Assembly: GCA_002269645.1 (NCBI GenBank)
Contig: NIVC01000598.1
Location: forward strand, 718,286-782,285
From: Macrostomum lignano
Taxonomy: Eukaryota
Length of the DNA stretch: 64,000 nt
Direction of reading: 5' to 3'
Shown: positions 21,434 to 49,240 of the stretch, piece after piece
Numbering within the stretch: position 1 is the first letter of the stretch
Layout: every line of letters starts with the position of its first letter
Program-made: the position numbers and the translations under genes
The notes under the pieces: generated by a model
What the model saw: only the letters and a program-made list of their open reading frames with translations
What the model was told of the DNA's origin: nothing
Databases searched by the model: none

Positions 21434-23017
21434 TAAAGAAGATAAAATCAAAGGAAAACAAAAGAAAAAAAATTAGGGAGTCAAAATTTCCCTAAAGGGA
21501 AATTTGGGAGTAGTAAATTTCCATGGAATTTAGTTTCAATAGCTCGTAGAAGATACCGACAAACCATTTTAGTATAGGTGGATGCATATACGAGCTATAT
21601 TTAAAACGCTTCTTCCATATTCCCACACGGGAGAATTTTCAACAGCCCTTCATTCACAACGGTATTTTTTCCTGAATCCAATCCATAGATATGCGACATC
21701 AGGTCTTTCCAGCCTCATCATCCTTCTCCTTGTCCTCATCCGAGACCCGGAATGCGCGATAATCAAAAGAGGCAGATGCAAGTGCCCGAATCGGCAAGTG
21801 CATTTTTCCATTCTTAAATAGCGATCGGGAGCCGGGGGATGCGGGGAAATGCAAGACCTCCTCCGCCTTCCCCTAACCAGATATAGGCGCCGGCAGGATG
21901 AAGCCCTTGAGTTTGAGTTGATGAGGCCCAGTGCAGCTATCAATCGGAAACTCTCGTCGCAAGCTAGAGGTGAGCGGGGCCGGGAACCCGTGGGAATCGA
22001 CAGGAGGCAACGACAAAGGAGAGGAAACGACAAAGGGGACGAGGAGACAACTGCAGCAGCAAGGGAACATAGGAACAAACGGGCACAAGGGCAATTTAAG
22101 CGAGCAAACGACCGATACCCTGCTTGCCATCGAGTTAACGATTTTGTCCGGAAAAAATGTTGAAATCAAGAGAGAAAGATAGGAATCCTCTTTAGACGAC
22201 GGCAAATGCGCACTTTTAATGAAGAATGGGACTGACAGGACTACAGGCTACACGACTCATTGGAGAAGCTTTGTGCTGTGCCATTTTTTATCCACCTGGA
22301 GGGGTAGTCCGTACGTCATTGTTTTTCCATTTACTTTTTCTCCAGCTTACTCGTACGTCAGTATAAGTCAGTATATAATGTTAGTTCCAATGATTTGATT
22401 AGCTGGAATTTTGTCATATAGACCAGTGCATTCAAGCCCCCCAGAAGCCAACTTGATTGCATCGTGTGCCTTGAGAGACTACGCCAGCCTATTCAGCTGT
22501 GTACTAACCGCGGCTAAATTTGCTTAACTTTCTGCGCTAGTACTGGGCTTAACGAAACATTCGCAGCTAATAAAGAAAAAAACCGTTAATAAGATGCGAT
22601 TATATACTAGTTCAGTGTCAGTGCATAATTATCAGTTCATATTTGAATTTCCACTCGTCAATATGAAAGTACATATTTATTTAGAATTGAATTAGGAACA
22701 CCGAACCAAATTTAATTATAATGGAGTAAAAACGGGTAACCAAAAATGAAAGTACGCACAATGTATTTTAGTACGCTTATAGATAATCTATTCTCTGAAT
22801 AAACGAACACAATGTTCTTTTTTGAATAAAAAAGCCGAGAAAAACCACAGGACAGTAGTTATAAACACTGGGTGGCTATGTACAGACACTAGCTATAATA
22901 GAGAATAACTTTAGCAAACAAATTGTACTTTTGCTAAGCCGATACAAAAGTTAACAAACTACGTACTTGTACTGGGAACATTATGCGAATTTGCGATTAA
23001 TAGTAGGCTTGCCATTG

Positions 23018-24907
23018 AGCCTGACTCTCTCCGCTCCCTCAGCCATTGAATCTGCCTCTCTCCGCCCCCTCAGCCATTGAATCTGCCTCTCTCCGCCCCC
23101 TCAGCCATTGAATCTGACTCTCTCCGCTCCCTCAGCCATTGAATCTGACTCTCTCTGCTCCCTCAGTCATTGAATCTGCCTCTCTCTGCTCCCTCAGTCA
23201 TTGAATCTGCCTCTCTCTGCTCCCTCAGTCATTGAATCTGCCTCTCTCTGCTCCCTCAGTCATTGAATCTGCCTCTCTCCGCTCCCTCAGCCATTGAATC
23301 TGACTCTCTCCGCTCCCTCAGCCATTGAATCTGCCTCTCTCCGCCCCCTCAGCCATTGAATCTGCCTCTCTCCGCTCCCTCAGCCATTGAATCTGACTCT
23401 CTCTGCTCCCTCAGTCATTGAATCTGCCTCTCTCTGCTCCCTCAGTCATTGAATCTGCCTCTCTCTGCTCCCTCAGTCATTGAATCTGCCTCTCTCTGCT
23501 CCCTCAGTCATTGAATCTGCCTCTCTCCGCTCCCTCAGTCATTGAATCTGACTCTCTCTGCTCCCTCAGTCATTGAATCTGCCTCCCTCCGCTCCCTCAG
23601 TCATTGAATCTGCCTCTCTCCGCTCCCTCAGTCATTGAATCTGCCTCTCTCCGCTCCCTCAGTCATTGAATCTGCCTCTCTCCGCTCCCTCAGTCATTGA
23701 ATCTGCCTCTCTCCTCTCCCTCAGTCATTGAATCTGCCTCTCTCCTCTCCCTCAGTCATTGAATCTGCCTCTCTCCGCTCCCTCAGTCATTGAATCTGCC
23801 TCTCTCCGCTCCCTCAGTCATTGAATCTGCCCCTCTCCGCTCCCTCAGTCATTGAATCTGACTCTCTCTGCTCCCTCAGTCATTGAATCTGCCTCTCTCC
23901 GCTCCCTCAGTCATTGAATCTGCCTCTCTCCCCTCCCTCAGTCATTGAATCTGCCTCTCTCCGCTCCCTCAGTCATTGAATCTGCCTCTCTCCGCTCCCT
24001 CAGTCATTGAATCTGCCTCTCTCTGCTCCCTCAGTCATTGAATCTGCCTCTCTCCGCTCCCTCAGTCATTGAATCTGCCTCTCTCCGCTCCCTCAGTCAT
24101 TGAATCTGCCTCTCTCCGCTCCCTCAGTCATTGAATCTGCCTCTCTCCGCTCCCTCAGTCATTGAATCTGCCTCTCTCCGCTCCCTCAGTCATTGAATCT
24201 GCCTCTCTCCGCTCCCTCAGTCATTGAATCTGCCTCTCTCCGCTCCCTCAGTCATTGAATCTGCCTCTCTCCGCTCCCTCAGTCATTGAATCTGCCTCTC
24301 TCCGCTCCCTCAGTCATTGAATCTGCCCCTCTCCGCTCCCTCAGTCATTGAATCTGACTCTCTCTGCTCCCTCAGTCATTGAATCTGCCTCTCTCCGCTC
24401 CCTCAGTCATTGAATCTGCCTCTCTCCCCTCCCTCAGTCATTGAATCTGCCTCTCTCCGCTCCCTCAGTCATTGAATCTGCCTCTCTCCGCTCCCTCAGT
24501 CATTGAATCTGCCTCTCTCCTCTCCCTCAGTCATTGAATCTGCCTCTCTCTGCTCCCTCAGTCATTGAATCTGCCTCTCTCCGCTCCCTCAGTCATTGAA
24601 TCTGCCTCTCTCCGCTCCCTCAGTCATTGAATCTGCCTCTCTCCGCTCCCTCAGTCATTGAATCTGCCTCTTTCCGCTCCCTCAGTCATTGAATCTGCCC
24701 CTCTCCGCTCCCTCAGTCATTGAATCTGCCTCTCTCCGCTCTCTGTCATTGAATCTGCCTCTCTCCGCTCTCAGTCATTGAATCTGCCTCTCTCCGCTTC
24801 CTCAGCCATTGAATCTGCCTCTCTCCGCTCTCAGTCATTGAATCTGCCTCTCTCCGCTCCCTCAGTCATTGAATCTGCCTCTCCGCTCCCTCAGTCATTG
24901 AATCTGC
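23018..24907. repeat. 31-bp minisatellite (CTCAGTCATTGAATCTGCCTCTCTCCGCTCC)
   Basis: Direct tandem copies, immediately downstream of VMA21. Confidence 0.97.
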
Positions 24908-24990: not shown

Positions 24991-25404
24991 TTAGTCCTGT
25001 TTAGCAGCCGCATCGGGCACCTCTTTACCAGTGCCGCCCTCCCAGAAGGCGAAGAACACGAAACCGGCCAGGATGATGTGCACGGTAACCACGGCAACAA
25101 TGGCCGCGTAGATGTAGCTCTGACGCGGCGCGATAGACAGAAAGCCTAAATCAATTCGGAAATGCAAATACAATTTTTACTACTTTTAAGTAGGTAAAGA
25201 GTTTAAAAACGAAAAATTAAAATACCAACCTTCAAATAGAAGCGATTTAGTGATGAAGTACAGGGTAATAGGCAATACGATGAGCAGCAGGCTGAATGTG
25301 ATGAGCACTTTCGCTACTGTGCCCAGCTGCTGCTGCTGCTGACGAATCGCCTGCACGTCCGGCTGGAGGGCGCCGGGCCCGGCTGCTGCTAGTGGCTTCT
25401 GCAT
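24991..25404 (-). CDS. VMA21: V-ATPase assembly factor VMA21, 109 aa; exons 25404-25230 and 25145-24991
   Basis: Two hydrophobic helices (KVLITFSLLLIVLPITLYFITK and YAAIVAVVTVHIILAGFVFFAF), C-terminal KQD as in human VMA21, and an 84-bp GT-AG intron (GAAG/GTTGGT...TTTAG/GC) that preserves frame. Confidence 0.9.
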
Positions 25405-25473
25405 TGCGCTTAGGTAGGCTGGAATTGTGCAGCGGCGACTGCTGTGTAGCTGGGTGGGTGCAGAGGGCTGGGC

Positions 25474-25826
<353 letters not shown>

Positions 25827-26049
25827 TCAGTTTATTTTTATCTGGTAAAGCTGTTCATTAAGAACAAAGTACTATAGAAATAAATCAGAGATTTTTTATT
25901 AAAATGACATGATCAGAATAAAAATGGAATGCACAAGTTAACTATATCAAAGTTGAATCACAGTTTTATCAAAATTTGAGCAGATTATCTAAGAAAGTCA
26001 CTGAAAATCAAACATCACGCCCGCAGTAGATACTACTATCGCATAACTA

Positions 26050-27110
26050 CTAGTTATAGTGCAAATCGGCGGTTAGTTTTTGAAAAACCAACAAATCGCT
26101 AACCATAGCCGAGAAGAAATACTCCCTAGTGAGCTCGGGCTCCAGGCCGGCCGGTTTCGGATCGGCGGCGGCCAGAGCCGATTCAACTAGGTCAAGCAGC
26201 TGATCATCTGCGAGGTTGCCGCCCACGGTGGCGGATAGGAATCTAAATAGGCCGGCCCGCCGCACTCGACCAGTCTGGTGGGGGTCCAGCACGCGCCAGA
26301 GCAGGTCGCGTTTCTCCTGCACGCTGGCCTGGCTGGATAGCAGCCAGACTAACCTGACGAATCGGTCAACATCGAGGCGGCTGGTGGAGCCGGCGACGGC
26401 CTTGGCAGCGAGCGTAAGCAAACGATTGCCCTGCGGCAGATGGCGAGGGATATCAAGGGATGGTGACATAGTGAGATAGGACTTCAGTGAAGTCTCAAGA
26501 TTTCTCAGTGAAGAGATAGCATCTTGGGGTTAAGACACTATCTCTAGGGTGAGATAGAATCTTAGGGATGAGACAGGATCTATATGCGTGAGACAGGATC
26601 TATATGCGTGAGACAGGATCTTAAAGGTGAGACAGGATCTTAGGGTGACATAGGATTTTAGGTATGAGACAGGATCTTAGGAATAAGATAGAGTCTTAGG
26701 TATGAGACAGGATCTTAAAGTTTAGACAGGATCTTAGGGTGAGATAGGATCTTAGGTATGAGACAGGATCTTAGGAATGAGACAGGATATTCGGAATGAG
26801 ATAGGATCAGTATGAGTCAGTAAAAGGGGATCTCAAAATGAGCCATTAAGTATCTCAAGGGGAGTCAACAAAAGCATATCAGAGTGGAGACGGAATGCCA
26901 GACACCCAGCGAATACTTAAAGCGCACCTGCATTTCAGTGCATTTTCCAGCCAGATCTTCGTACCACACACCGGCAGTGTGGTTTCTGCTCCTATCCAAT
27001 TGGCGGTACTTGGCCAACACTTGGTTGACTTCCTCTTCCGTGTAGCTGCAGAACCGGCTGTAAGCCTGCAGCTGTTGAGGCGTTGCGCGAAACACGGAGT
27101 GACCTTCGGC
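26050..27110 (-). CDS. Divergent calcineurin-B-like EF-hand protein; exons 27110-26928 and 26430-26050; no in-frame ATG found
   Basis: The spliced translation AEGHSVF...CSYTEEEVNQVLAKYRQLD...EMQ/GNRLL...QEKRDLLWRVLDPHQTGRV...LFRFLSATVGGNLADDQLLDLV...FQKLTADLHYN* aligns by eye over the full length of calcineurin B (CSHFDADEIKRL...ELQQNPL...EQKLRFAFRIYD...MMVGNNLKDTQLQQIV...KKMVVDV). Splice sites are CAG/GTGCGC and CCGCAG/GGC, both phase 0. Confidence 0.8.
26470..26810. repeat. Degenerate minisatellite of about 20 bp (GAGACAGGATCTTAGG core), intronic
   Basis: Recurrent GAGACAGGATC motif inside the calcineurin-B-like intron. Confidence 0.8.
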
Positions 27111-27174
27111 CTGAAATTTGAATATTAAAATTTCTGCGATGCAAACATTGGAACTCAATCAATCTGTTCTTGAT

Positions 27175-27850
27175 GCTCTGCTGATTATCGAGAAAGGAAT
27201 TCCCATACTCTGCTGATTCTCAAGGGGGAATTCCCATGCTGTGCTGATTCTCAAGGGGGAATTCCCATACTGTGCTGATTCTCAAGGGGGAATTCCCCGC
27301 ATACTTTTCTAATTCTCAAGGGGGAATTCCCATACTCTGCTGATTCCCAAGGGGAATTCCGATACTTTTTTGATTCTCAAGGGAAAATTCACTTACTGTT
27401 GATTCTCAGGGGTATTCCTATACTTCTTAAAGGGGAATTCTCATACTCTGTTGATTCTCAAAGGGAAATTCAATTACTGTTGATTCTCAGGGGTATTCCC
27501 ATACTTTTTTTATTCTCAAGGGGGGAATTCCCCGCATACTTTTCTGATTCTCAAGGGGGAATTCCCATACTCTGCTGATCCCCAAGGGGGAATTCCGATA
27601 CTTTGTTGATTCTCAAGGGAAAATTCACTTACTGTTGATTCTCAGGGGTATTCCTATACTTTGTTTATTCTCAAGAGGGGAATTCCCCCCATACTTTGCT
27701 GATTCTCAAGGGGGAATTCTCATACTCGACTGATTCTCAGGGGCATTCACTTACTCTGTTGATTCTTAAGGGGGAATTAACTTACTGTTAATTCTCGGGG
27801 GGGGCGGGGTGAATTACCATACTCTTTTGATTATAAAAGGGAATTTCCAT
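27175..27850. repeat. Degenerate minisatellite of about 30 bp (CTGATTCTCAAGGGGGAATTCCCATACT core)
   Basis: Recurrent motif between COQ10 and the calcineurin-B-like gene. Confidence 0.85.
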
Positions 27851-28620
27851 ACTTTAAATAAACCCCCTCTATTGTGATACCTCTAAAGCCCCCACATAGA
27901 TTCCTACCCATTCCCAACCTATTTAGCTCAATGTAAGAAGAAACTCACAACCTTGTAACTTCCACGCGAACGACTCTATGTCGAAATTAAATAATTTTTT
28001 GTTTTATTACTACAAATAAAAGGCAGACACAAGCCCAGGACGCAGTGGTATGGGCAAGTAGGACACAAAACCCTGCATGTTTGCATCAAAGACGTGCTGC
28101 ACTGACTACACAATACACAAATTCACAATACAATAGTTGATTAGACAGCAATATAACCTTGTCTATCAATAAACGCATAAAGCATACAGGTCATTTCAAC
28201 TATTTATATTGTATCACAGGAGCTGTACAATTACTACAGCATATTAATAAAGAAATGATTGAGCAGCACCAGACTGAGCATCGGTGACAGTAAAGCTCAT
28301 GCCCGAGACGAAAGATAGTTGTAACTGTCTTTGAAATACGCCAATAGAACAGTTGATATGAAGTCAGCAAGACGAAGCCAGCAGTCATGCCTATTCCGGT
28401 GACCCCTGAGGATTTCAAAGTCGGGGCCGCTGTTAAGGCACACGCTAGCACACCCTGTGTGAGCGTGTGTCTGCGTACGTGCCTGTTTACAGCAAGTGCT
28501 CAGGAGTCAGTGGAACGGGCAGAATTGCCCCAGCCTGCGAATCTCTACTATTGTATATCATGTCGTCACTTCTTTTGAAAGAACAATTAACTTCCGATTC
28601 AGGCCAGATTGCCGATGCCA

Positions 28621-29262
28621 TCATCTCTTGTACACCAGAACAGTAGGCCGCTGCGGCCCTACACTCTCCGGCCCGTAACGCCGCCCGGCCTCGCGCAGGA
28701 ACGCAGACACCATGGCGGTGACCACCCGATCAAAGAACAGATCTGCTAAGGAGGTGTGCAAACTGCTTTGAAAAGCGAATTCAACGCCGAAATCGAGTAT
28801 GCAAGTGGCTGGCCGGCCACTCAAGCCGGGATGAAATCGCCAAGTTGTATCTAGGAGACGAAACAGATTTGCGTCTGTACAACGCGAATGAACAAGCTGA
28901 GGCCGGCAGCACGTGACTACGGAGCTGTAGCTCTGCTGCAACAAGGGCGGGAACCCGATGCTTAGCCGGCCAGTGAATTGTTCGCCTGGCCCGCTGACAC
29001 CGGCAGCGCCGGGTAGGCCAAAATTAGCAACATCAACAAGCTGACGGCGATCTTCAACTTGGCTACCTGTGCACCAGGGCACGAATCTGTGATAGTGCTC
29101 AACTCCGGACACTACCGCAAACATCTGCTCCCGACTGAAGCCGAGAAGGCGACGCTCAGCGTAGCGCATTGTAGCCACCGGAGTTGAAGTCGGCGATTTC
29201 ATTGAAGTTGACAAACTGCGACGCTGGCGCAGCAACAAAAGATTCGCCTTTATCTTGTTCAT
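28621..29262 (-). CDS. COQ10: Coenzyme Q-binding protein COQ10 homolog (START/SRPBCC fold), 213 aa, single coding exon
   Basis: Motifs YAERRLLGFSREQMFAVVSGVEHYHRFVPWC, IGFPP...YSSVVT, LFRLLDTTWRF and CILDFGVEFAFQSSLH...LFFDRVV. The Arg/Ser/Leu-rich N-terminus resembles a mitochondrial presequence. Confidence 0.93.
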   Translation of the reverse strand: MNKIKANLLLLRQRRSLSTSMKSPTSTPVATMRYAERRLLGFSREQMFAVVSGVEHYHRFVPWCTGSQVEDRRQLVDVANFGLPGAAGVSGPGEQFTGRLSIGFPPLLQQSYSSVVTCCRPQLVHSRCTDANLFRLLDTTWRFHPGLSGRPATCILDFGVEFAFQSSLHTSLADLFFDRVVTAMVSAFLREAGRRYGPESVGPQRPTVLVYKR

Positions 29263-29353
29263 CTTAATAGTCGACCTCTTGGGACCGCAGAGGAGGCCGG
29301 TAAAAAAGGTTAGGCAGCGACAGCAGTAGAGTGCTGAAAAAGGTTGCGTAGCT

Positions 29354-30212
29354 CAGGTGGAGAATATTAGCAGGTAGGAATGGGTCAGGTGGAGAATATT
29401 AGCAGGTAGGAATGGGTCAGGTGGAGAATATTAGCAGGTAGGAATGGGTCAGGTGGAGAATATTAGCAGGTAGGAATGGGTCAGGTAGAGAATATTAGCA
29501 GGTAGGAATGGGTCAGGTAGAGAACATTAGCAGGTAGGAATGGGTCAGGTGGAGAATATTAGCAGGTAGGAATGGGTCAGGTGGAGAATATTAGCAGGTA
29601 GGAATGGGTCAGGTGGAGAATATTAGCAGGTAGGAATGGGTCAGGTGGAGAATATTAGCAGGTAGGAATGGGTCAGGTAGAGAATATTAGCAGGTAGGAA
29701 TGGGTCAGGTGGAGAATATTAGCAGGTAGGAATGGGTCAGGTGGAGAATATTAGCAGGTAGGAATGGGTCAGGTGGAGAATATTAGCAGGTAGGAATGGG
29801 TCAGGTGGAGAATATTAGCAGGTAGGAATGGGTCAGGTGGAGAATATTAGCAGGTGGGAATGGGTCAGGTAGAGAATATTAGCAGGTAGGAATGGGTCAG
29901 GTGGAGAATATTAGCAGGTAGGAATGGGTCAGGTAGAGAATATTAGCAGGTAGGAATGGGTCAGGTGGAGAATATTAGCAGGTAGGAATGGGTCAGGTGG
30001 AGAATATTAGCAGGTAGGAATGGGTCAGGTGGAGAATATTAGCAGGTAGGAATGGGTCAGGTGGAGAATATTAGCAGGTAGGAATGGGTCAGGTGGAGAA
30101 TATTAGCAGGTAGGAATGGGTCAGGTGGAGAATATTAGCAGGTAGGAATGGGTCAGGTGGAGAATATTAGCAGGTAGGAATGGGTCAGGTAGAGAATTAT
30201 AGCAGGTGGGAA
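29354..30212. repeat. 32-bp minisatellite (CAGGTGGAGAATATTAGCAGGTAGGAATGGGT)
   Basis: Highly homogeneous tandem copies between RPL39 and COQ10. Confidence 0.98.
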
Positions 30213-30428
30213 TGGATTAATCCCAGTCTAATTAAGAGCACATCCTTCTTACAGTAAGCAGCTGTGCCTAGAAAAAAGAAATAAGAGAAAACCGAAATTC
30301 CAAATAAGATTCCGTCAACAATAAATTTTTTATTTGCTTCAAACAGACTTAAGCAAAATGTCAGCAGCCAGCTCAAACGATTCCACATATGCTACATCAA
30401 TCTGACGTCACGAAACAATCAATCCATA

Positions 30429-30584
30429 TTACAACCTCAGCTTAGTACGGCGCCAGTGCCGCCTTTTGGCATTGTACCGCACCGTGTTGCCATTGCGCAT
30501 GCGAACCCATTGCGGCACTGGCCGATTCACCTTCTGCTTTCGGGCCAGCTTAGTTTTCATGCGGAAAGTCTTGTGCGACGGCAT
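30429..30584 (-). CDS. RPL39: 60S ribosomal protein L39 (eL39), 51 aa, intronless CDS; absent from the ORF track because it is under 60 aa
   Basis: Manual translation: [57 protein letters not shown] on the minus strand at 30329-30334 and a TTTCAG acceptor 26 nt upstream of the ATG. Confidence 0.96.
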
Positions 30585-42420: not shown

Positions 42421-45400
42421 ATGAGTTTTTACTCACTCTACTTAGCGGGGATGCCCAGCTACTATGCAGAGGTAATTACTAACTAGAACTTCTTCACTTT
42501 AACTGTTATGCTTCAATATTGCTCTAACCATTAAAAATGCAACCTCTATAGGGGAGAATATGGAGCATGTTTGAGACCTGCGGACCTGTGGAATCAGTTT
42601 TCATTAAACAGCACTTCGACAATGGCACTCTGCAAGGCTTTGTGAACATGCGCGATTGGTCTGGAGCAGAGCAGGCTGTCAATCAGTTCAATGGCTATGC
42701 TGTCGAGCCCAATGTTAAACTAACTGTACGGCACAAGACTAATCGAAATAGTTATAATCAGCGCAATAATAACACGGCAAACCGTAGTTCGAATGATAGT
42801 CTTAGCCAACCAGCTAGATCGTCGATTGCTTCCAACGACAGTTTGCCAATTTTGCCACTGTTGTCGTCTCTGCCGGCACCTACCGCTGGTGCCGCCGCCG
42901 CTGTGCCACCGCCGCCACAACCGTTGCATAACAATGTTCCCTGCAGTTCGCCGCCCGCTGCTGTGTAAGCTGGCAGCGGGAGTATAGGAGCGGGTGTGAG
43001 AAGGGAGCGAAGGTCATAGAAGGAGCGGGTGTGAGAAGTCAGCGAAGGTCATAGAAGGAGCGGGTGTGAGAAGGGAGCGAAGGTCATAGAAGGAGCGGGT
43101 GTGAGAAGTCAGCGAAGGTCATAGAAGGAGCGGGTGTGAGAAGTGAGCGAAGGTCATAGAAGCAGCGGGTGTGAGAAGTGAGCGAAGGTCATAGAAGCAG
43201 CGGGTGTGAGAAGTGAGCGAAGGTCATAGAAGGAGCGGGTGTGAGAAGGGAGCGAAGGTCAAAGAAGCAGCGGGTGTGAGGAGGGAGCGAAGATCATAGA
43301 AGGAGCGGGTGTGAGAAGTGAGCGAAGGTCATAGAAGGAGCGGGTGTGAGAAGTCAGCGAAGGTCATAGAAGGAGCGGGTGTGAGAAGTCAGCGAAGGTC
43401 ATAGAAGGAGCGGGTGTGAGAAGTGAGCGAAGATCATAGAAGGAGCGGGTGTGAGAAGTGAGCGAAGGTTATAGAAGGAGCGGGTGTGAGAAGTGAGCGA
43501 AGGTCATAGAAGGAGTGGGTGTGAGAAGTCAGCGAAGGTCATAGAAGCAGCGGGTGTGAGAAGTGAGCGAAGGTCATAGAAGGAGCGGGTGTGAGAAGGG
43601 AGCGAAGGTCAAAGAAGCTGCGGGTGTGAGGAGGGAGCGAAGGTCAAAGAAGCAGCGGGTGTGAGGAGGGAGCGAAGGTCAAAGAAGCAGCGGGTGTGAG
43701 GAGGGAGCGAAGGTCATAGAGGGAGCGAAGGTCATAGAAGGAGCAGGTGTGAGAAGGGAGCGAAGGTCATAGAAGCAGCGGGTGTGAGGAGGGAGCGAAG
43801 ATCATAGCAGCGGGTGTAGGCCATAAGGGGTGGAGGCCTTACGTCACTGCCTGTAACCGCAATGCTAAAAATTTCAGGCGCAGGCGGTTAGACTGGCTGA
43901 GGCTGGACCAAACGGCCATGCTAAGTATTTATTTGGACGCTAAGCAGTTTCGCAGTGCAGCCAAATTCTGGGTTAGCGCACTCCCGCCTAGTAACCCGGG
44001 CGAGCCGGATTTTCAGACCGAACTGGACTCGTGGGCGTCTAATCCGGCATCGAAAATATCTGCATCGGTTGCCAGGGACAACGTTGGTACTAGCGGCGGC
44101 CTGATAGCATGCATCGATGGTTTGGCTTGCCGAGTTCAACTCATTGAGTCGCTCAGCGTCAATCTGTTTCGGGCATTTCTAGTCGACATTGGCGTCGAAA
44201 GGCGGGTAGAGGCAGCGGAATTGAGGTCGCTGCCAGCTAGTCTGGCCGTGCCACCGTGCCGGGCCTTGCAAGTGAGAATTTATAGTTGCTATGGTAACTG
44301 AGGCTGCTTGTGGGAATGAAATTAATATAACGATTTTTTAAGGGTTGGGATTTTTTGAGAATATGAAATTGGAAGGAGATTTAAAGATTTGTGGTTGATT
44401 AGGGTATTTGAGGATCTGGGATTTGGAGATCTAGGATTGATTAGAGGATTTTGGGATCTGGGATTGATTAGGGGATTTGAGGATTTGGGATTGACTAGGG
44501 GATTAGAGGATCTGTGATTGGTTGAAGAATTTGAGGATCTGGGATTGATTAGGGGATTTTGGGATCTGGGATTGATTAGGGGATTTTGGGATCTGGGATT
44601 GATTAGGGGATTTTGGGATCTGGGATTGATTAGGGGATTTTGGGATCTGGGATTGATTAAGGCATCATTGGAGGATCTGGGATTGATAATGGGTTTTGAG
44701 GATGTGTGTAATAGCTCGTAAATCTCTTAATCTCACCGGTTCGCCCTCCCCCCCCCCCATGACAGGTGTCATTCCGTGGCCTGAAGGATGACGATCCTGG
44801 CTTGGCCGATGCCACAGCCCAGCTGCTCCGGCTTGCCGAACTGCACAATGGCTTATTAACTATTCGTCGCTGCGGCAAAAGTCGCGCCTGCGACGGATTC
44901 ATGCTTATCCCTGTGGACGTGCTCGAGGCCGATCAGGAATCCCCATCTGTCACTGGCAAATCTCTGCAGCCCACGCCGTCGATTCAGGCATCAAAGGCGC
45001 CGACTCAGGCGCCGACTCAGGCACCGACTCACTCACAGACTCAGGCACCGACTCACTCACAGACTCAGGCACCGAATCAGCAACCGACTCAGGCACCGAC
45101 TCACTCACAGACTCAGGCACCGACTCAGGCACCGAATCAGCAACCGACTCAGGCACCGAATCAGGCACCGACTCGAGCACCGAGTCAGACACCGAATCGG
45201 GCACCGAATCGGGCACCGACTCAGGCACCGAATCAGACACCGACTCGAGCGCCGACCCAGGCACCGAAACAGCAACCGACTCGAGCACCGAATCAGGCAC
45301 CGAGTCGAGCTTCTATGGCGTTGAAAGCTTCAAATTCGCTGACTACTGCAGAGTTGCTGCGAATAACTGGCCAATCAAAGCTCTTAGCCAGCCTGCCGGG

Positions 45401-47487: not shown

Positions 47488-49232
47488 TGTAGTGTACGCC
47501 CAGTCTATGCCTTTACTCTTCTGTGATGAATAACTATGGCCCTCTCGACCAACGTGCACTGACTTGTCCCTCAACTATTGCGTAACATTGTAGCCGCACG
47601 TCGGCAGTGATACTATATAGTAGCTCAAATATACGGTCCATGAGACCATGATTTTCTCAGCACACAAGCGCACTACAATGGCGTCGCAAGCAAGCCTACC
47701 CATACCGGCCACATTGAACTTGCGCGAGGAGCCCCATGCGGCACATACGAAGTGGAGCAAGTGGCTGGCTCAGTTCCAGCTGTTCGCCGCGGCTGCTGAC
47801 ATCTCTGACAAGAAGCGACTTCGCCAACTCCTATACATAGCGGGCGAGGACCTGCAGGCCGTTGCAGCCGGACTCGCCGACACCGATGATGACGTCGACA
47901 AGCTAATCAAGGCTCTCAATGAGCACTTCACCAGCCAGCTCAACCTGCCCTTCACCCGCTACCAGTTCCGGCTGTGCACCCAGCAGACCGGAGAGTCCCT
48001 GGACGACTGGCTGCGGCGGCTCAACAACACCGCGGACTGTTGCAAATTCGAAGGCCTCCGGGACTCGCTGATCCGCGACCAGCTGATCGCCGGCTGCAGC
48101 TCCGAGAAGCTCCGCAGGAAGCTGCTGGCCATGGACAACGTGGACCTGGGCCAGGCGGTCCGGGTGGCCAGGGCCATGGAGGCAGCGGAGGCGCAGGCCA
48201 GCCTCATGGAGACCAGCGCAGTGACCGTGCAGCGGTTGCGGAAGCGCGAGTCCAGCCCGCCAGGGCAGCCGCAGAGATCAGCCACTCAGACAGTCGATCG
48301 CACGCAGCCAAAGTGCATCCGCTGCGGCAACTTCGGCCACCGCAGCTGCAGCGCAGCGGTAGGCAAGACCTGCAACCGATGCGGCAAGCCGAATCACCTC
48401 GCCAAGGCCTGTCTGTCCCGGCCGGAGGACGTGCGAGCTCTGCGGGTCGGCAGCGACAGTTCGGGCGAAGAGGACGACGTCTTCTGCCTGACCGTGATGG
48501 CCTCCGACACGAACGCAACAGCGGCTCTTGCCACGGTGCTGGTAGAAGCGACTCCAGTGCAGGTGCTGGTGGACAGCGGAGCCGACTGTAACATCCTCAC
48601 CGAGGCAGCCTGGCGAGAGCTCCCGGGACCCCCAGGCCTGCAGCCGACGACAAAGAAGATTTTTTCATTTCAATCAGCTAAACCTCTGCGCACTGTGGGA
48701 GCCTGCAGCCTGCAGGTTTCGGTTGGCTCAATGGTCCGGCGCGCCAGCTTCATCATCGTCCCAGGGACCGGCACCAGCGTGCTCGGCCGTGCAACCTCGA
48801 CATCTCTGCAGCTGCTGAGTCTGGGGACGCAGGACCGCGCACCGGCCAGAGAGACAACAAGTCTGAGCGATTCTCTAAACGCGCAACCAGTCCAGGACAA
48901 CGTACTGCTGCAGCAGCTCAACTCTGTCAAGTCTGCACCGGAAGGCCCGACCATCAAGAGCGTCCGCGATGCCACAGCTGGGGACCCGGCTCTGACCTTC
49001 GTCATGCAGGCGTTGGCAACTGGCGCTCCGGCGCTACAGACCAGGCCGGCAGCTTCCACTCGCTCAAGGGGGAGCTTCAGGTGCGTGACGGCGTGCTGCT
49101 CAGGGGCAACAAAATCGTTGTACCCGCAGCGCTTCAGCAGCAGACCGTCAGTTGGGCCCACCAGGGTCAATTTGGCAGGAGGAAGGCCATCGACCGGCTG
49201 CGGGGGAAATTCTGGTGGCCTGGCATGGCGCG
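47488..49232 (+). mobile_element. Ty3/gypsy-type LTR retroelement, RT/RNase H-less and 3'-truncated
   Basis: Putative 190-bp 5' LTR 47488-47677 bounded by TGTAGTG...CACTACA, then a PBS-like TGGCG. Gag with two CCHC-like knuckles (CIRCGNFGHRSC, CNRCGKPNHLAKAC), protease VLVDSGADCNIL, and, after a frameshift, integrase zinc-binding segment ELQVRDGVLLRGNKIVVP...AHQGQFG...FWWPGM. Confidence 0.88.
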
Positions 49233-49240
49233 GCAGTTAG
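47678..49240 (+). CDS. Gag-protease polyprotein running into the pre-integrase linker (retroelement ORF)
   Basis: ORF from ATG 47678 (MASQASLP...). No YxDD reverse-transcriptase motif is present. Confidence 0.8.
   Translation: MASQASLPIPATLNLREEPHAAHTKWSKWLAQFQLFAAAADISDKKRLRQLLYIAGEDLQAVAAGLADTDDDVDKLIKALNEHFTSQLNLPFTRYQFRLCTQQTGESLDDWLRRLNNTADCCKFEGLRDSLIRDQLIAGCSSEKLRRKLLAMDNVDLGQAVRVARAMEAAEAQASLMETSAVTVQRLRKRESSPPGQPQRSATQTVDRTQPKCIRCGNFGHRSCSAAVGKTCNRCGKPNHLAKACLSRPEDVRALRVGSDSSGEEDDVFCLTVMASDTNATAALATVLVEATPVQVLVDSGADCNILTEAAWRELPGPPGLQPTTKKIFSFQSAKPLRTVGACSLQVSVGSMVRRASFIIVPGTGTSVLGRATSTSLQLLSLGTQDRAPARETTSLSDSLNAQPVQDNVLLQQLNSVKSAPEGPTIKSVRDATAGDPALTFVMQALATGAPALQTRPAASTRSRGSFRCVTACCSGATKSLYPQRFSSRPSVGPTRVNLAGGRPSTGCGGNSGGLAWRGS

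What the first reader, a model, noticed from the sequence alone, without database searches (positions are those of the whole stretch)
26928..27158. Calcineurin-B-like gene with no start codon: initiator AUG may be donated by the spliced leader
Seen: the first homologous exon begins right after TTTCAG with GCC GAA GGT. No ATG occurs in frame upstream before the reading frame closes (the ORF-track start at 27158 is TTG inside the acceptor region). Adding one Met gives MAEGHSVF..., with an N-terminus close to the normal calcineurin B length. Established: flatworm spliced leaders end in AUG, which can act as the initiator. Inference: this protein can only be made after trans-splicing.
Basis: partly seen in the sequence, partly recalled or inferred. 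Interest (0 to 1): 0.8.

Follow-up and report, generated by a model that had tools for sequence, protein, structure and literature searches.

The report
Flatworm gene borrowing its start codon
A calcineurin-B-like gene of the flatworm Macrostomum lignano has no start codon of its own and most likely gets its AUG from the spliced leader added by trans-splicing, a mechanism already shown for dozens of schistosome genes, so this is a new example rather than a new mechanism.

Summary
On the minus strand, a 61-codon exon (27110-26928) starts right after TTTCAG. An in-frame TGA (27161-27159) closes the frame upstream, with no in-frame ATG between it and the exon. The first genomic in-frame ATG is codon 60.

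The window is Macrostomum lignano (100% match to UniRef A0A1I8IBQ9 and GenBank PAA80097.1).

Evidence for a spliced-leader (SL) start codon:
- The published 35-nt M. lignano SL ends in ATG.
- Joined at TTTCAG|GCC, it gives a 188-aa ORF, MAEGHSVF....
- This is the only AG in phase between the stop and the start of homology, and the only one matching the published trans-splice motif [T/C]TNCAG.
- Exon 1 in this frame matches the N-terminus of a ~182-aa family (33 bits; best of 1000 shuffles 6.3).
- GenBank lists the protein as 5'-partial. It shares a transcriptional-unit prefix (Mlig000057) with the upstream COQ10-like gene, which implies it was cut out at an SL signal.

Caveat: I saw no junction reads. 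The GenBank CDS starts 9 nt after the acceptor, next to an out-of-frame AAG|GT. However, the neighbouring gene's annotated starts vary by 2-8 nt, so this is weak evidence.

SL-donated AUGs have been known in flatworms since 2006. Verdict: a new member of a known kind, of modest interest.

The parts
27159..27161 (-). In-frame TGA that closes the reading frame upstream of exon 1
   Evidence: the upstream in-frame translation reads ...SRTD*LSSNVCIAEILIFKFQ, with no ATG
27111..27116 (-). TTTCAG, the proposed SL trans-splice acceptor (junction 27111|27110)
   Evidence: It matches the published M. lignano trans-splice motif [T/C]TNCAG (PMC8629364). It is the only AG in phase 0 between the stop and the start of homology. 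It is identical in all three paralogous copies.
26928..27110 (-). Exon 1, 61 codons (AEGHSVF...CTEMQ), with no ATG in any frame until its last 16 nt
   Evidence: frame 0 scores 33.3 bits against the family N-terminal HMM. The best of 1000 shuffles scores 6.3 bits, and the other two frames were not reported as hits.
27104..27105 (-). Alternative AG (CCGAAG|GTCAC) 7 nt downstream. It would put the SL AUG out of frame and give an unrelated 86-aa ORF.
   Evidence: The GenBank CDS start at CAC (27101) is compatible with a transcript starting at 27103.
26931..26933 (-). First genome-encoded in-frame ATG (codon 60). Starting here would give only a 128-aa truncated product.
26431..26927 (-). Intron of 497 nt (GTGCGC...CCGCAG) holding a 19-nt tandem array at 26513-26808
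   Evidence: The splice agrees with GenBank protein PAA80097.1.
26050..26430 (-). Exon 2, 126 codons plus the TAG stop
25895..25900 (-). AATAAA, the likely poly(A) signal of the gene
   Evidence: Read directly from the sequence; inference
27176..27801 (-). 31-nt tandem array (about 20 copies) in the outron between the COQ10-like gene and this gene
28621..29333 (-). Upstream COQ10-like gene of the same transcriptional unit. Its acceptor is TTTTCAG|, its exon starts at 29333, and it has its own ATG at 29262.
   Evidence: Pfam Polyketide_cyc; GenBank name Mlig000057g2 next to Mlig000057g3
24991..25418 (-). Downstream VMA21 gene. Its acceptor is TTCCAG|, its exon starts at 25418, and it has its own ATG at 25404.

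Best explanation
This is a two-exon M. lignano gene for a calcineurin-B-fold protein whose EF-hand loops are degenerate. It is a downstream gene of a polycistronic transcriptional unit on the minus strand, in the order RPL39, COQ10-like, this gene, VMA21. I propose that its pre-mRNA is trans-spliced at TTTCAG|GCC (27111|27110) to the 35-nt spliced leader. The last three bases of the leader, AUG, then sit directly in frame with GCC GAA GGT CAC... and act as the only available initiator. The product would be a 188-aa protein, MAEGHSVFRATPQQ....

Shown here:
- the gene structure
- the lack of a genomic start codon
- homology of exon 1 in this frame
- the phase and consensus of the acceptor
- the ATG end of the SL (from the literature)
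- the 5'-partial, cut-from-a-transcriptional-unit status in the RNA-seq-based annotation

Inferred:
- that the junction is exactly at 27110
- that ribosomes start at the SL AUG
- that Met is then removed from Met-Ala, and that the family's usual N-terminal Met-Gly (a typical myristoylation start) is absent here
For: - No in-frame ATG lies between the TGA (27161-27159) and codon 60.
- Exon 1 frame 0 matches the N-terminal part of the homologous family: 33.3 bits, against 6.3 bits for the best of 1000 shuffles. The aligned region is residues 10-53, so translation must begin within or before the first 9 codons.
- In the multiple alignment, the family's Met1-Gly2 aligns with Glu2-Gly3 of the exon. 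An SL Met would therefore lie only two residues upstream of the usual start.
- The organism is M. lignano. Its SL ends in ...TTGCATG, and the trans-splice acceptor motif is [T/C]TNCAG (PMC8629364).
- Of the six AGs between the stop and the start of homology, only 27112-27111 is in phase 0, and only it fits the motif.
- SL plus exon gives a 188-aa ORF from the first AUG of the mRNA.
- GenBank proteins PAA80097.1, PAA62708.1 and PAA65905.1 are '5' partial', with no upstream exon.
- The upstream COQ10-like gene is Mlig000057g2 and this gene is Mlig000057g3 on the same contig. In this annotation, genes sharing a prefix are cut from one transcriptional unit at SL and poly(A) signals (PMC5730564).
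- The three copies keep intact ORFs, with pN/pS about 0.16-0.48. The AlphaFold model is confident, with pLDDT 90.
- There is precedent: the SL AUG is required by more than 40 S. mansoni cDNAs (Cheng et al. 2006, via PMC9851317; also PMC5832876 and PMC12582326).
Against: - I could not retrieve any SL-containing read or cDNA for this gene. The cluster has no transcript-derived member, and look-ups failed.
- The GenBank CDS begins at CAC (27101), 9 nt after the acceptor. That fits a transcript starting at 27103, after AAG|GT, which would put the SL AUG out of frame.
- This argument is weakened by the COQ10-like neighbour. The annotated starts of its three near-identical copies lie 2, 5 and 8 nt after one acceptor position, with no AG in between, so these 5' ends are not base-exact.
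- The SL AUG context (U at -3, G at +4) is only moderate.
- The copies are about 97% identical around exon 1, so conservation says little.
- The selection signal rests on only 2-4 substitutions of each kind per pairwise comparison.
Confidence: 0.65

Rival explanations
1. Trans-splicing happens mainly at the downstream AAG|GTCAC site (27104|27103), as the GenBank 5' end might suggest. The SL AUG then opens an unrelated 86-codon frame. The calcineurin-B-like frame would be read only poorly, for example from Met60 by leaky scanning, giving a 128-aa truncated protein.
For: The annotated CDS starts at 27101, which is 0-2 nt after a transcript start at 27103 preceded by AG. For VMA21 and one COQ10-like copy, the annotated starts lie exactly 2 nt after their CAG acceptors.
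Against: - CCGAAG does not fit the [T/C]TNCAG motif and lies 7 nt behind a perfect TTTCAG. By established knowledge of 3' splice-site choice, the first AG after the pyrimidine tract is preferred, and CAG is preferred over AAG.
- Annotated 5' ends in this assembly wander by up to 8 nt with no AG to explain it.
- The first 59 codons are clearly homologous to the family N-terminus and remain open, so they must be translated.
Confidence: 0.12
2. An unannotated cis-spliced upstream exon, or an alternative promoter, supplies a normal ATG that is joined to the same acceptor.
For: The acceptor would serve cis-splicing equally well. One phase-0 candidate exists, ATG|GTAATT at 27820-27818 inside the 31-nt repeat array. 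It is present in all three copies and would give the same MAEGH... protein.
Against: - The RNA-seq-based annotation has no upstream exon. It leaves the ORF open to the transcript's 5' end in all three copies.
- The candidate donor is a variant repeat unit of only moderate strength (7 of 9 consensus positions). The other 22 candidates are weaker.
- The gene is annotated as cut from a polycistronic unit.
Confidence: 0.08
3. The locus is a decaying or non-translated copy. The start codon was lost, and the transcript is processed but makes no functional protein.
For: - There is no genomic ATG.
- All four EF-hand loops are degenerate (alignment), and no Pfam EF-hand hit was found.
- Identity to the nearest homologues is only about 30%.
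- No orthologue from another flatworm was found.
Against: - Three copies keep a 187-codon ORF with no frameshift or stop, and pN is below pS in each pair.
- The AlphaFold model is confident and compact.
- The homologous family has similarly degenerate loops, so degeneracy is a family trait and not decay.
Confidence: 0.08
4. Translation starts at a near-cognate codon in the exon (GUG at codon 6 or CUG at codon 13), or at the TTG at 27158 on RNA that has not been trans-spliced.
For: In-frame GTG (27095-27093) and CTG codons exist upstream of the homologous region.
Against: On a trans-spliced mRNA, an AUG lies upstream of these codons and would be met first. The TTG at 27158 lies in the outron, which trans-splicing removes. 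Nothing points specifically to non-AUG initiation.
Confidence: 0.05

Closest known systems
[quoted passage not shown]
   Same: The flatworm SL ends in AUG. The acceptor is in phase with the main ORF. There is no usable genomic ATG upstream of the conserved coding region.
   Different: The species is a free-living macrostomid, not a trematode, and the SL sequence and gene differ. Nothing here has been shown experimentally, whereas the schistosome cases rest on cDNAs. From my own recollection of that paper, which I could not read here, they also rest on translation assays.
slORFs: ORFs created by SL addition in nematodes, ascidians and euglenozoa (Song et al. 2023, PMC9851317)
   Same: The start codon comes from the leader and not from the gene.
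   Different: Many of those start at non-AUG NUG codons inside the SL and are extra ORFs. Here the SL AUG would start the gene's only full-length conserved ORF.
M. lignano operons and SL trans-splicing (Wudarski et al. 2017, PMC5730564; Ustyantsev & Berezikov 2021, PMC8629364)
   Same: The genes are on one strand, have TTNCAG acceptors, and are separated by repeat-filled spacers. The gene names share one transcriptional-unit prefix.
   Different: As far as I could find, those papers do not discuss the SL AUG as an initiator.
Calcineurin B (PPP3R1) and its structural relatives CHP1/2 and CIB2/3
   Same: The fold is the four-EF-hand type, with query-normalised TM about 0.65-0.72. Sequence similarity to calcineurin B is weak but significant, E 1.4e-6.
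   Different: None of the four loops keeps the canonical calcium-binding pattern. There is no Met-Gly start. Identity is about 20%. Binding to calcineurin A is untested.
Uncharacterised ~182-aa 'MGxxxS...' family annotated 'calcineurin subunit B-like' (Owenia A0A8J1Y7I9, Capitella R7VC60, Lingula XP_013421789.1, Asterias XP_071800638.1, Holothuria KAJ8027136.1)
   Same: These are the best full-length homologues, at 25-33% identity with E down to 2e-13. They share the length and the degenerate loops.
   Different: Nearly all of them encode their own Met-Gly start. The M. lignano gene has GAA where they have ATG, and it starts two codons earlier.

Membership tests
Flatworm mRNAs initiated at the spliced-leader AUG | The species' SL ends in AUG | tested here: met
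   The organism was identified as M. lignano. The published SL is CGGTCTCTTACTGCGAAGACTCAATTTATTGCATG (PMC8629364). No SL RNA gene lies in the window itself.
Flatworm mRNAs initiated at the spliced-leader AUG | The mRNA is SL trans-spliced at the 5' end of the coding exon | tested here: inconclusive
   Support is indirect. The GenBank gene is 5'-partial, has no upstream exon, and shares a transcriptional-unit prefix with the upstream gene. The acceptor fits the motif. No junction read was seen, and the annotated end is 7-9 nt inside the exon.
Flatworm mRNAs initiated at the spliced-leader AUG | The SL AUG is in frame with the main ORF, with no intervening stop | tested here: met
   SL plus exon from 27110 gives a 188-aa ORF. 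This holds only for that junction. The junction at 27103 gives an unrelated 86-aa ORF.
Flatworm mRNAs initiated at the spliced-leader AUG | No genomic in-frame AUG upstream of the conserved coding region | tested here: met
   The first in-frame ATG is codon 60. Homology starts by residue 10.
Flatworm mRNAs initiated at the spliced-leader AUG | Translation demonstrably starts at the SL AUG | not testable with these tools
   This needs Ribo-seq, N-terminal proteomics or a reporter assay.
Calcineurin B (regulatory subunit of protein phosphatase 2B) | Four canonical calcium-binding EF-hand loops | tested here: not met
   No Pfam EF-hand model reaches threshold. In the alignment to human calcineurin B, the loop equivalents, e.g. 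DPHQTGRVRRAG for EF3 and AGSTSRLDVDRF for EF2, lack the usual acidic ligands.
Calcineurin B (regulatory subunit of protein phosphatase 2B) | N-terminal Met-Gly (myristoylation site) | tested here: not met
   The predicted N-terminus is Met-Ala-Glu-Gly.
Calcineurin B (regulatory subunit of protein phosphatase 2B) | Calcineurin-B-type four-EF-hand fold | tested here: met
   The AlphaFold model has pLDDT 90.3. The top Foldseek hits are calcineurin B chains 6tz8_B, 5b8i_B and 4or9_B, with query-normalised TM 0.65-0.70.
Calcineurin B (regulatory subunit of protein phosphatase 2B) | Binds the calcineurin A B-binding helix | not tested
   No complex modelling or assay was done.
M. lignano operon (Ustyantsev & Berezikov 2021 criteria) | Adjacent same-strand genes, the downstream one trans-spliced, with a repeat-adjusted spacer under 1 kb | tested here: met
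   From the COQ10-like stop (28621) to the acceptor (27110) is 1510 nt, of which 626 nt are a tandem array. From this gene's stop (26050) to the VMA21 acceptor (25419) is about 630 nt, of which about 350 nt are (TCTA)n. Trans-splicing status is inferred from the annotation.

The most novel reading that the evidence does not exclude
In M. lignano, a member of an otherwise Met-Gly-initiated EF-hand family has lost its own start codon. It has become strictly dependent on operon-resolving SL trans-splicing for translation, and in the process it has swapped a likely myristoylated N-terminus for Met-Ala-Glu-Gly. If many of the thousands of '5' partial' proteins in the M. lignano annotation are of this kind, SL-donated initiation would be a general and so far unannotated feature of free-living flatworm proteomes.
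Probability: 0.45. Interest if true: 0.45.

Novelty: new member of a known kind. Interest (0 to 1): 0.3.

Why it matters
If correct, the GenBank and UniProt entries for this protein (PAA80097.1, PAA62708.1, PAA65905.1, A0A1I8IBQ9) are not truncated. They lack only the Met supplied by the leader, plus up to three further residues (Ala-Glu-Gly) in the GenBank entries.

The same fix may apply to other '5' partial' M. lignano genes. That matters for proteomics databases and for designing transgenes in this model organism. A transgene copied from genomic DNA without an added ATG would depend on trans-splicing in the right phase.

It also extends SL-AUG initiation from parasitic flatworms to an early-branching free-living one. 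That supports the idea that the conserved terminal AUG of flatworm leaders is functional. It does not reveal a new mechanism.

Tried and rejected
- **Transcript evidence.** I looked for transcript-derived proteins or contigs that would show the junction. The 90% cluster holds only UniRef and GenBank genome-derived entries.
- **Gene identifier.** A search for Mlig000057 in papers and supplements found nothing. Cheng et al. 2006 is not held in the library.
- **GenBank CDS start as the splice site.** I rejected this as precise evidence because the neighbouring gene's starts differ by 2, 5 and 8 nt among copies.
- **Paralogue comparison.** The copies are about 97% identical around exon 1 and identical at the acceptor, so the comparison is uninformative.
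- **SL RNA gene in the window.** None was found, allowing up to 3 mismatches.
- **Upstream cis exons.** Of 23 phase-0 ATG...GT candidates, none is convincing.
- **The WormBase/UniProt models starting IFKFQ or FKFQ.** I could not explain their 12-15 nt extension upstream of the acceptor by alignment of the SL. It remains unexplained and was not used as evidence.
- **Orthologues in other flatworms.** None was found in either protein search.

Full report
**What is there.** The feature lies on the minus strand.
- After TTTCAG (27116-27111), an exon begins GCC GAA GGT CAC TCC GTG... at 27110. It runs 61 codons to CAG|GTGCGC (26928|26927).
- A 497-nt intron follows. A second exon (26430-26050) adds 126 codons and a TAG stop.
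- Upstream in frame, the sequence reads TGA (27161-27159) followed by 16 codons without ATG. The ORF-list 'start' at 27158 is a TTG.
- The only nearby ATG (27148) is out of frame. The first in-frame genomic ATG is codon 60, at 26933-26931.

**Whose gene it is.**
- The joined protein is 100% identical to UniRef A0A1I8IBQ9 of the flatworm Macrostomum lignano.
- It is also identical, from His4 onward, to GenBank PAA80097.1, a '5' partial' protein of 184 aa.
- The window matches contig NIVC01000598.1 of assembly GCA_002269645.1. Two further near-identical copies lie on other contigs.

**What the protein is.**
- By sequence it is closest to calcineurin B among solved structures, at E 1.4e-6.
- An AlphaFold model built on 14 sequences is confident (pLDDT 90.3). 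Its best structural matches are calcineurin B, followed by calaxin, CIB2/3 and CHP1.
- No Pfam EF-hand model reaches threshold. The four loop equivalents lack the usual calcium ligands (alignment).
- Its nearest full-length relatives, at 25-33% identity, are an uncharacterised ~182-aa family found in annelids, a brachiopod, a mollusc, echinoderms and a hemichordate. Nearly all of these begin Met-Gly.
- I call it calcineurin-B-like by fold. I do not call it a calcineurin B orthologue.

**Exon 1 is coding in this frame.**
- An HMM of the family's N-terminal 64 alignment columns, built without the M. lignano sequence, scores the frame-0 translation of exon 1 at 33.3 bits.
- The best of 1000 shuffles scores 6.3 bits, and the other two frames were not reported as hits.
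- The aligned stretch is residues 10-53. Translation must therefore start within or before the first nine codons, where there is no ATG.
- In the multiple alignment, the family's Met1-Gly2 falls on Glu2-Gly3 of the exon.

**Where the start codon can come from.**
- The single published M. lignano spliced leader is CGGTCTCTTACTGCGAAGACTCAATTTATTGCATG. The enriched motif at trans-splice acceptors is [T/C]TNCAG (PMC8629364).
- TTTCAG fits that motif.
- Of the six AG dinucleotides between the in-frame stop and the start of homology, only this one is in phase 0.
- Joining the leader to 27110 puts its terminal AUG, the first AUG of the mRNA, in frame with a 188-aa ORF, MAEGHSVF....

**Evidence that the gene is trans-spliced.** The GenBank annotation of this assembly was built from RNA-seq. 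Transcriptional units were cut into genes at positions where SL-containing reads and poly(A) reads map (PMC5730564). Genes cut from one unit share a name prefix, as in Mlig030697.g1 and .g2 (Supplementary Fig. 5 legend).

On one contig, the upstream COQ10-like gene is Mlig000057g2 (PAA65904.1) and this gene is Mlig000057g3 (PAA65905.1). No upstream exon is annotated, and the ORF is left open to the transcript's 5' end. This is indirect but real support for a polycistronic precursor and an SL site at this exon.

The surroundings agree. RPL39, the COQ10-like gene, this gene and VMA21 lie on the same strand. The neighbours have TTNCAG acceptors just upstream of their coding regions. The spacers are filled with tandem arrays, as described for M. 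lignano operons.

**The main difficulty.** The GenBank CDS starts at CAC (27101), 9 nt after the acceptor. A transcript starting at 27103 would follow another AG (CCGAAG|GTCAC). From that junction the SL AUG reads an unrelated 86-codon frame.

I tested how exact these annotated ends are, using the COQ10-like neighbour. Its three copies have CDS starts 2, 5 and 8 nt after the same acceptor position, with no AG in between. The ends are therefore not base-exact, and the 9-nt offset does not decide the question.

On mechanistic grounds (established knowledge of 3' splice-site selection), an upstream CAG behind a pyrimidine run is preferred over a downstream AAG. The downstream site remains the chief rival, and only junction reads can settle it.

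**Other rivals.**
- *Upstream cis exon.* A scan of the 1.5 kb upstream found 23 phase-0 ATG...GT candidates. The best is ATG|GTAATT inside the repeat array at 27820-27818. None is annotated or convincing.
- *Pseudogene.* This reading is disfavoured. The three copies keep intact ORFs with pN below pS, although this rests on only 2-4 changes of each kind per comparison. The protein also folds confidently.
- *Near-cognate initiation.* This is possible in principle, but the SL AUG lies upstream of those codons.

[quoted passage not shown] The 2006 study by Cheng et al. found the SL AUG in frame in 28% of trans-spliced S. mansoni transcripts and required by more than 40 cDNAs (as summarised in PMC9851317). 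The present case is a further example in a free-living species. I found no paper that reports this for M. lignano or for this gene.

**Verdict.**
The exact junction and the use of the SL AUG are inferred, not shown.
- The mechanism is already known, so this is a new member of a known kind and of modest interest.
- The practical value lies in correcting '5' partial' annotations and in transgene design for this model animal.

Noticed in passing
window 24991-30584, minus strand: There is a four-gene same-strand cluster: RPL39 (30584-30429), COQ10-like (29333-28621), the calcineurin-B-like gene (27110-26050) and VMA21 (25418-24991). Each neighbouring gene has a TTNCAG acceptor just upstream of its coding region, so the cluster looks like an operon.
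   Followed up: partly
window 23013-24907, 25476-25826, 26513-26808, 27176-27801, 29353-30215: Every spacer of the cluster, and the intron, holds a short-period tandem array. The periods are 31 nt, 4 nt (TCTA)n, 19 nt, 31 nt and 32 nt. The whole 64-kb window has more than 20 such arrays.
   Followed up: partly
window 29333 and 25418 (exon starts), minus strand: With the M. lignano leader, the SL AUG would create an 8-codon upstream ORF on the COQ10-like mRNA and a 3-codon one on VMA21. Both genes have their own ATG. Only the calcineurin-B-like gene is open and in frame with the SL AUG.
   Followed up: partly
L003:3845-3865 (paralogous copy of the COQ10-like gene): In this copy the acceptor CAG reads CATG, so the AG is lost, yet a 5'-partial gene is still annotated there. 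This may be a dead acceptor or an assembly error.
   Followed up: no
L001:3777, L002:3811, L003:3865: The GenBank 5'-partial CDS starts of the three COQ10-like copies lie 8, 2 and 5 nt after the same acceptor position. Annotated 5' ends in this assembly are therefore not base-exact.
   Followed up: yes
window 26103-26104 (donor) and 25450-25451 (acceptor), minus strand: UniProt models A0A1I8FZR4 and A0A1I8FZ78 fuse the calcineurin-B-like protein to VMA21. The splice runs from inside the last exon to 45 nt upstream of the VMA21 ATG. It could be a real read-through isoform or a prediction artefact.
   Followed up: no
window 27122-27127, minus strand: The UniProt models of this gene begin IFKFQ or FKFQ, which is 12-15 nt upstream of the acceptor in what should be outron. 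I could not explain this by alignment of the leader sequence.
   Followed up: partly
window 47648-49240 (+) and 42567-42968 (+): A 530-aa ORF has a weak Pfam PNMA (gag-like) match at E 5e-6, and a 133-aa ORF has an RRM_1 match. They probably belong to a retroelement-derived gene and to an RNA-binding-protein exon.
   Followed up: no
proteins P0011-P0017, P0023 (Owenia, Holothuria, Capitella, Asterias, Solemya, Lingula, Saccoglossus): The closest relatives form an uncharacterised ~182-aa family, mostly starting Met-Gly, with degenerate EF-hand loops. They are variously labelled 'calcineurin subunit B-like' or 'CIB3-like'. No other flatworm member was found.
   Followed up: partly
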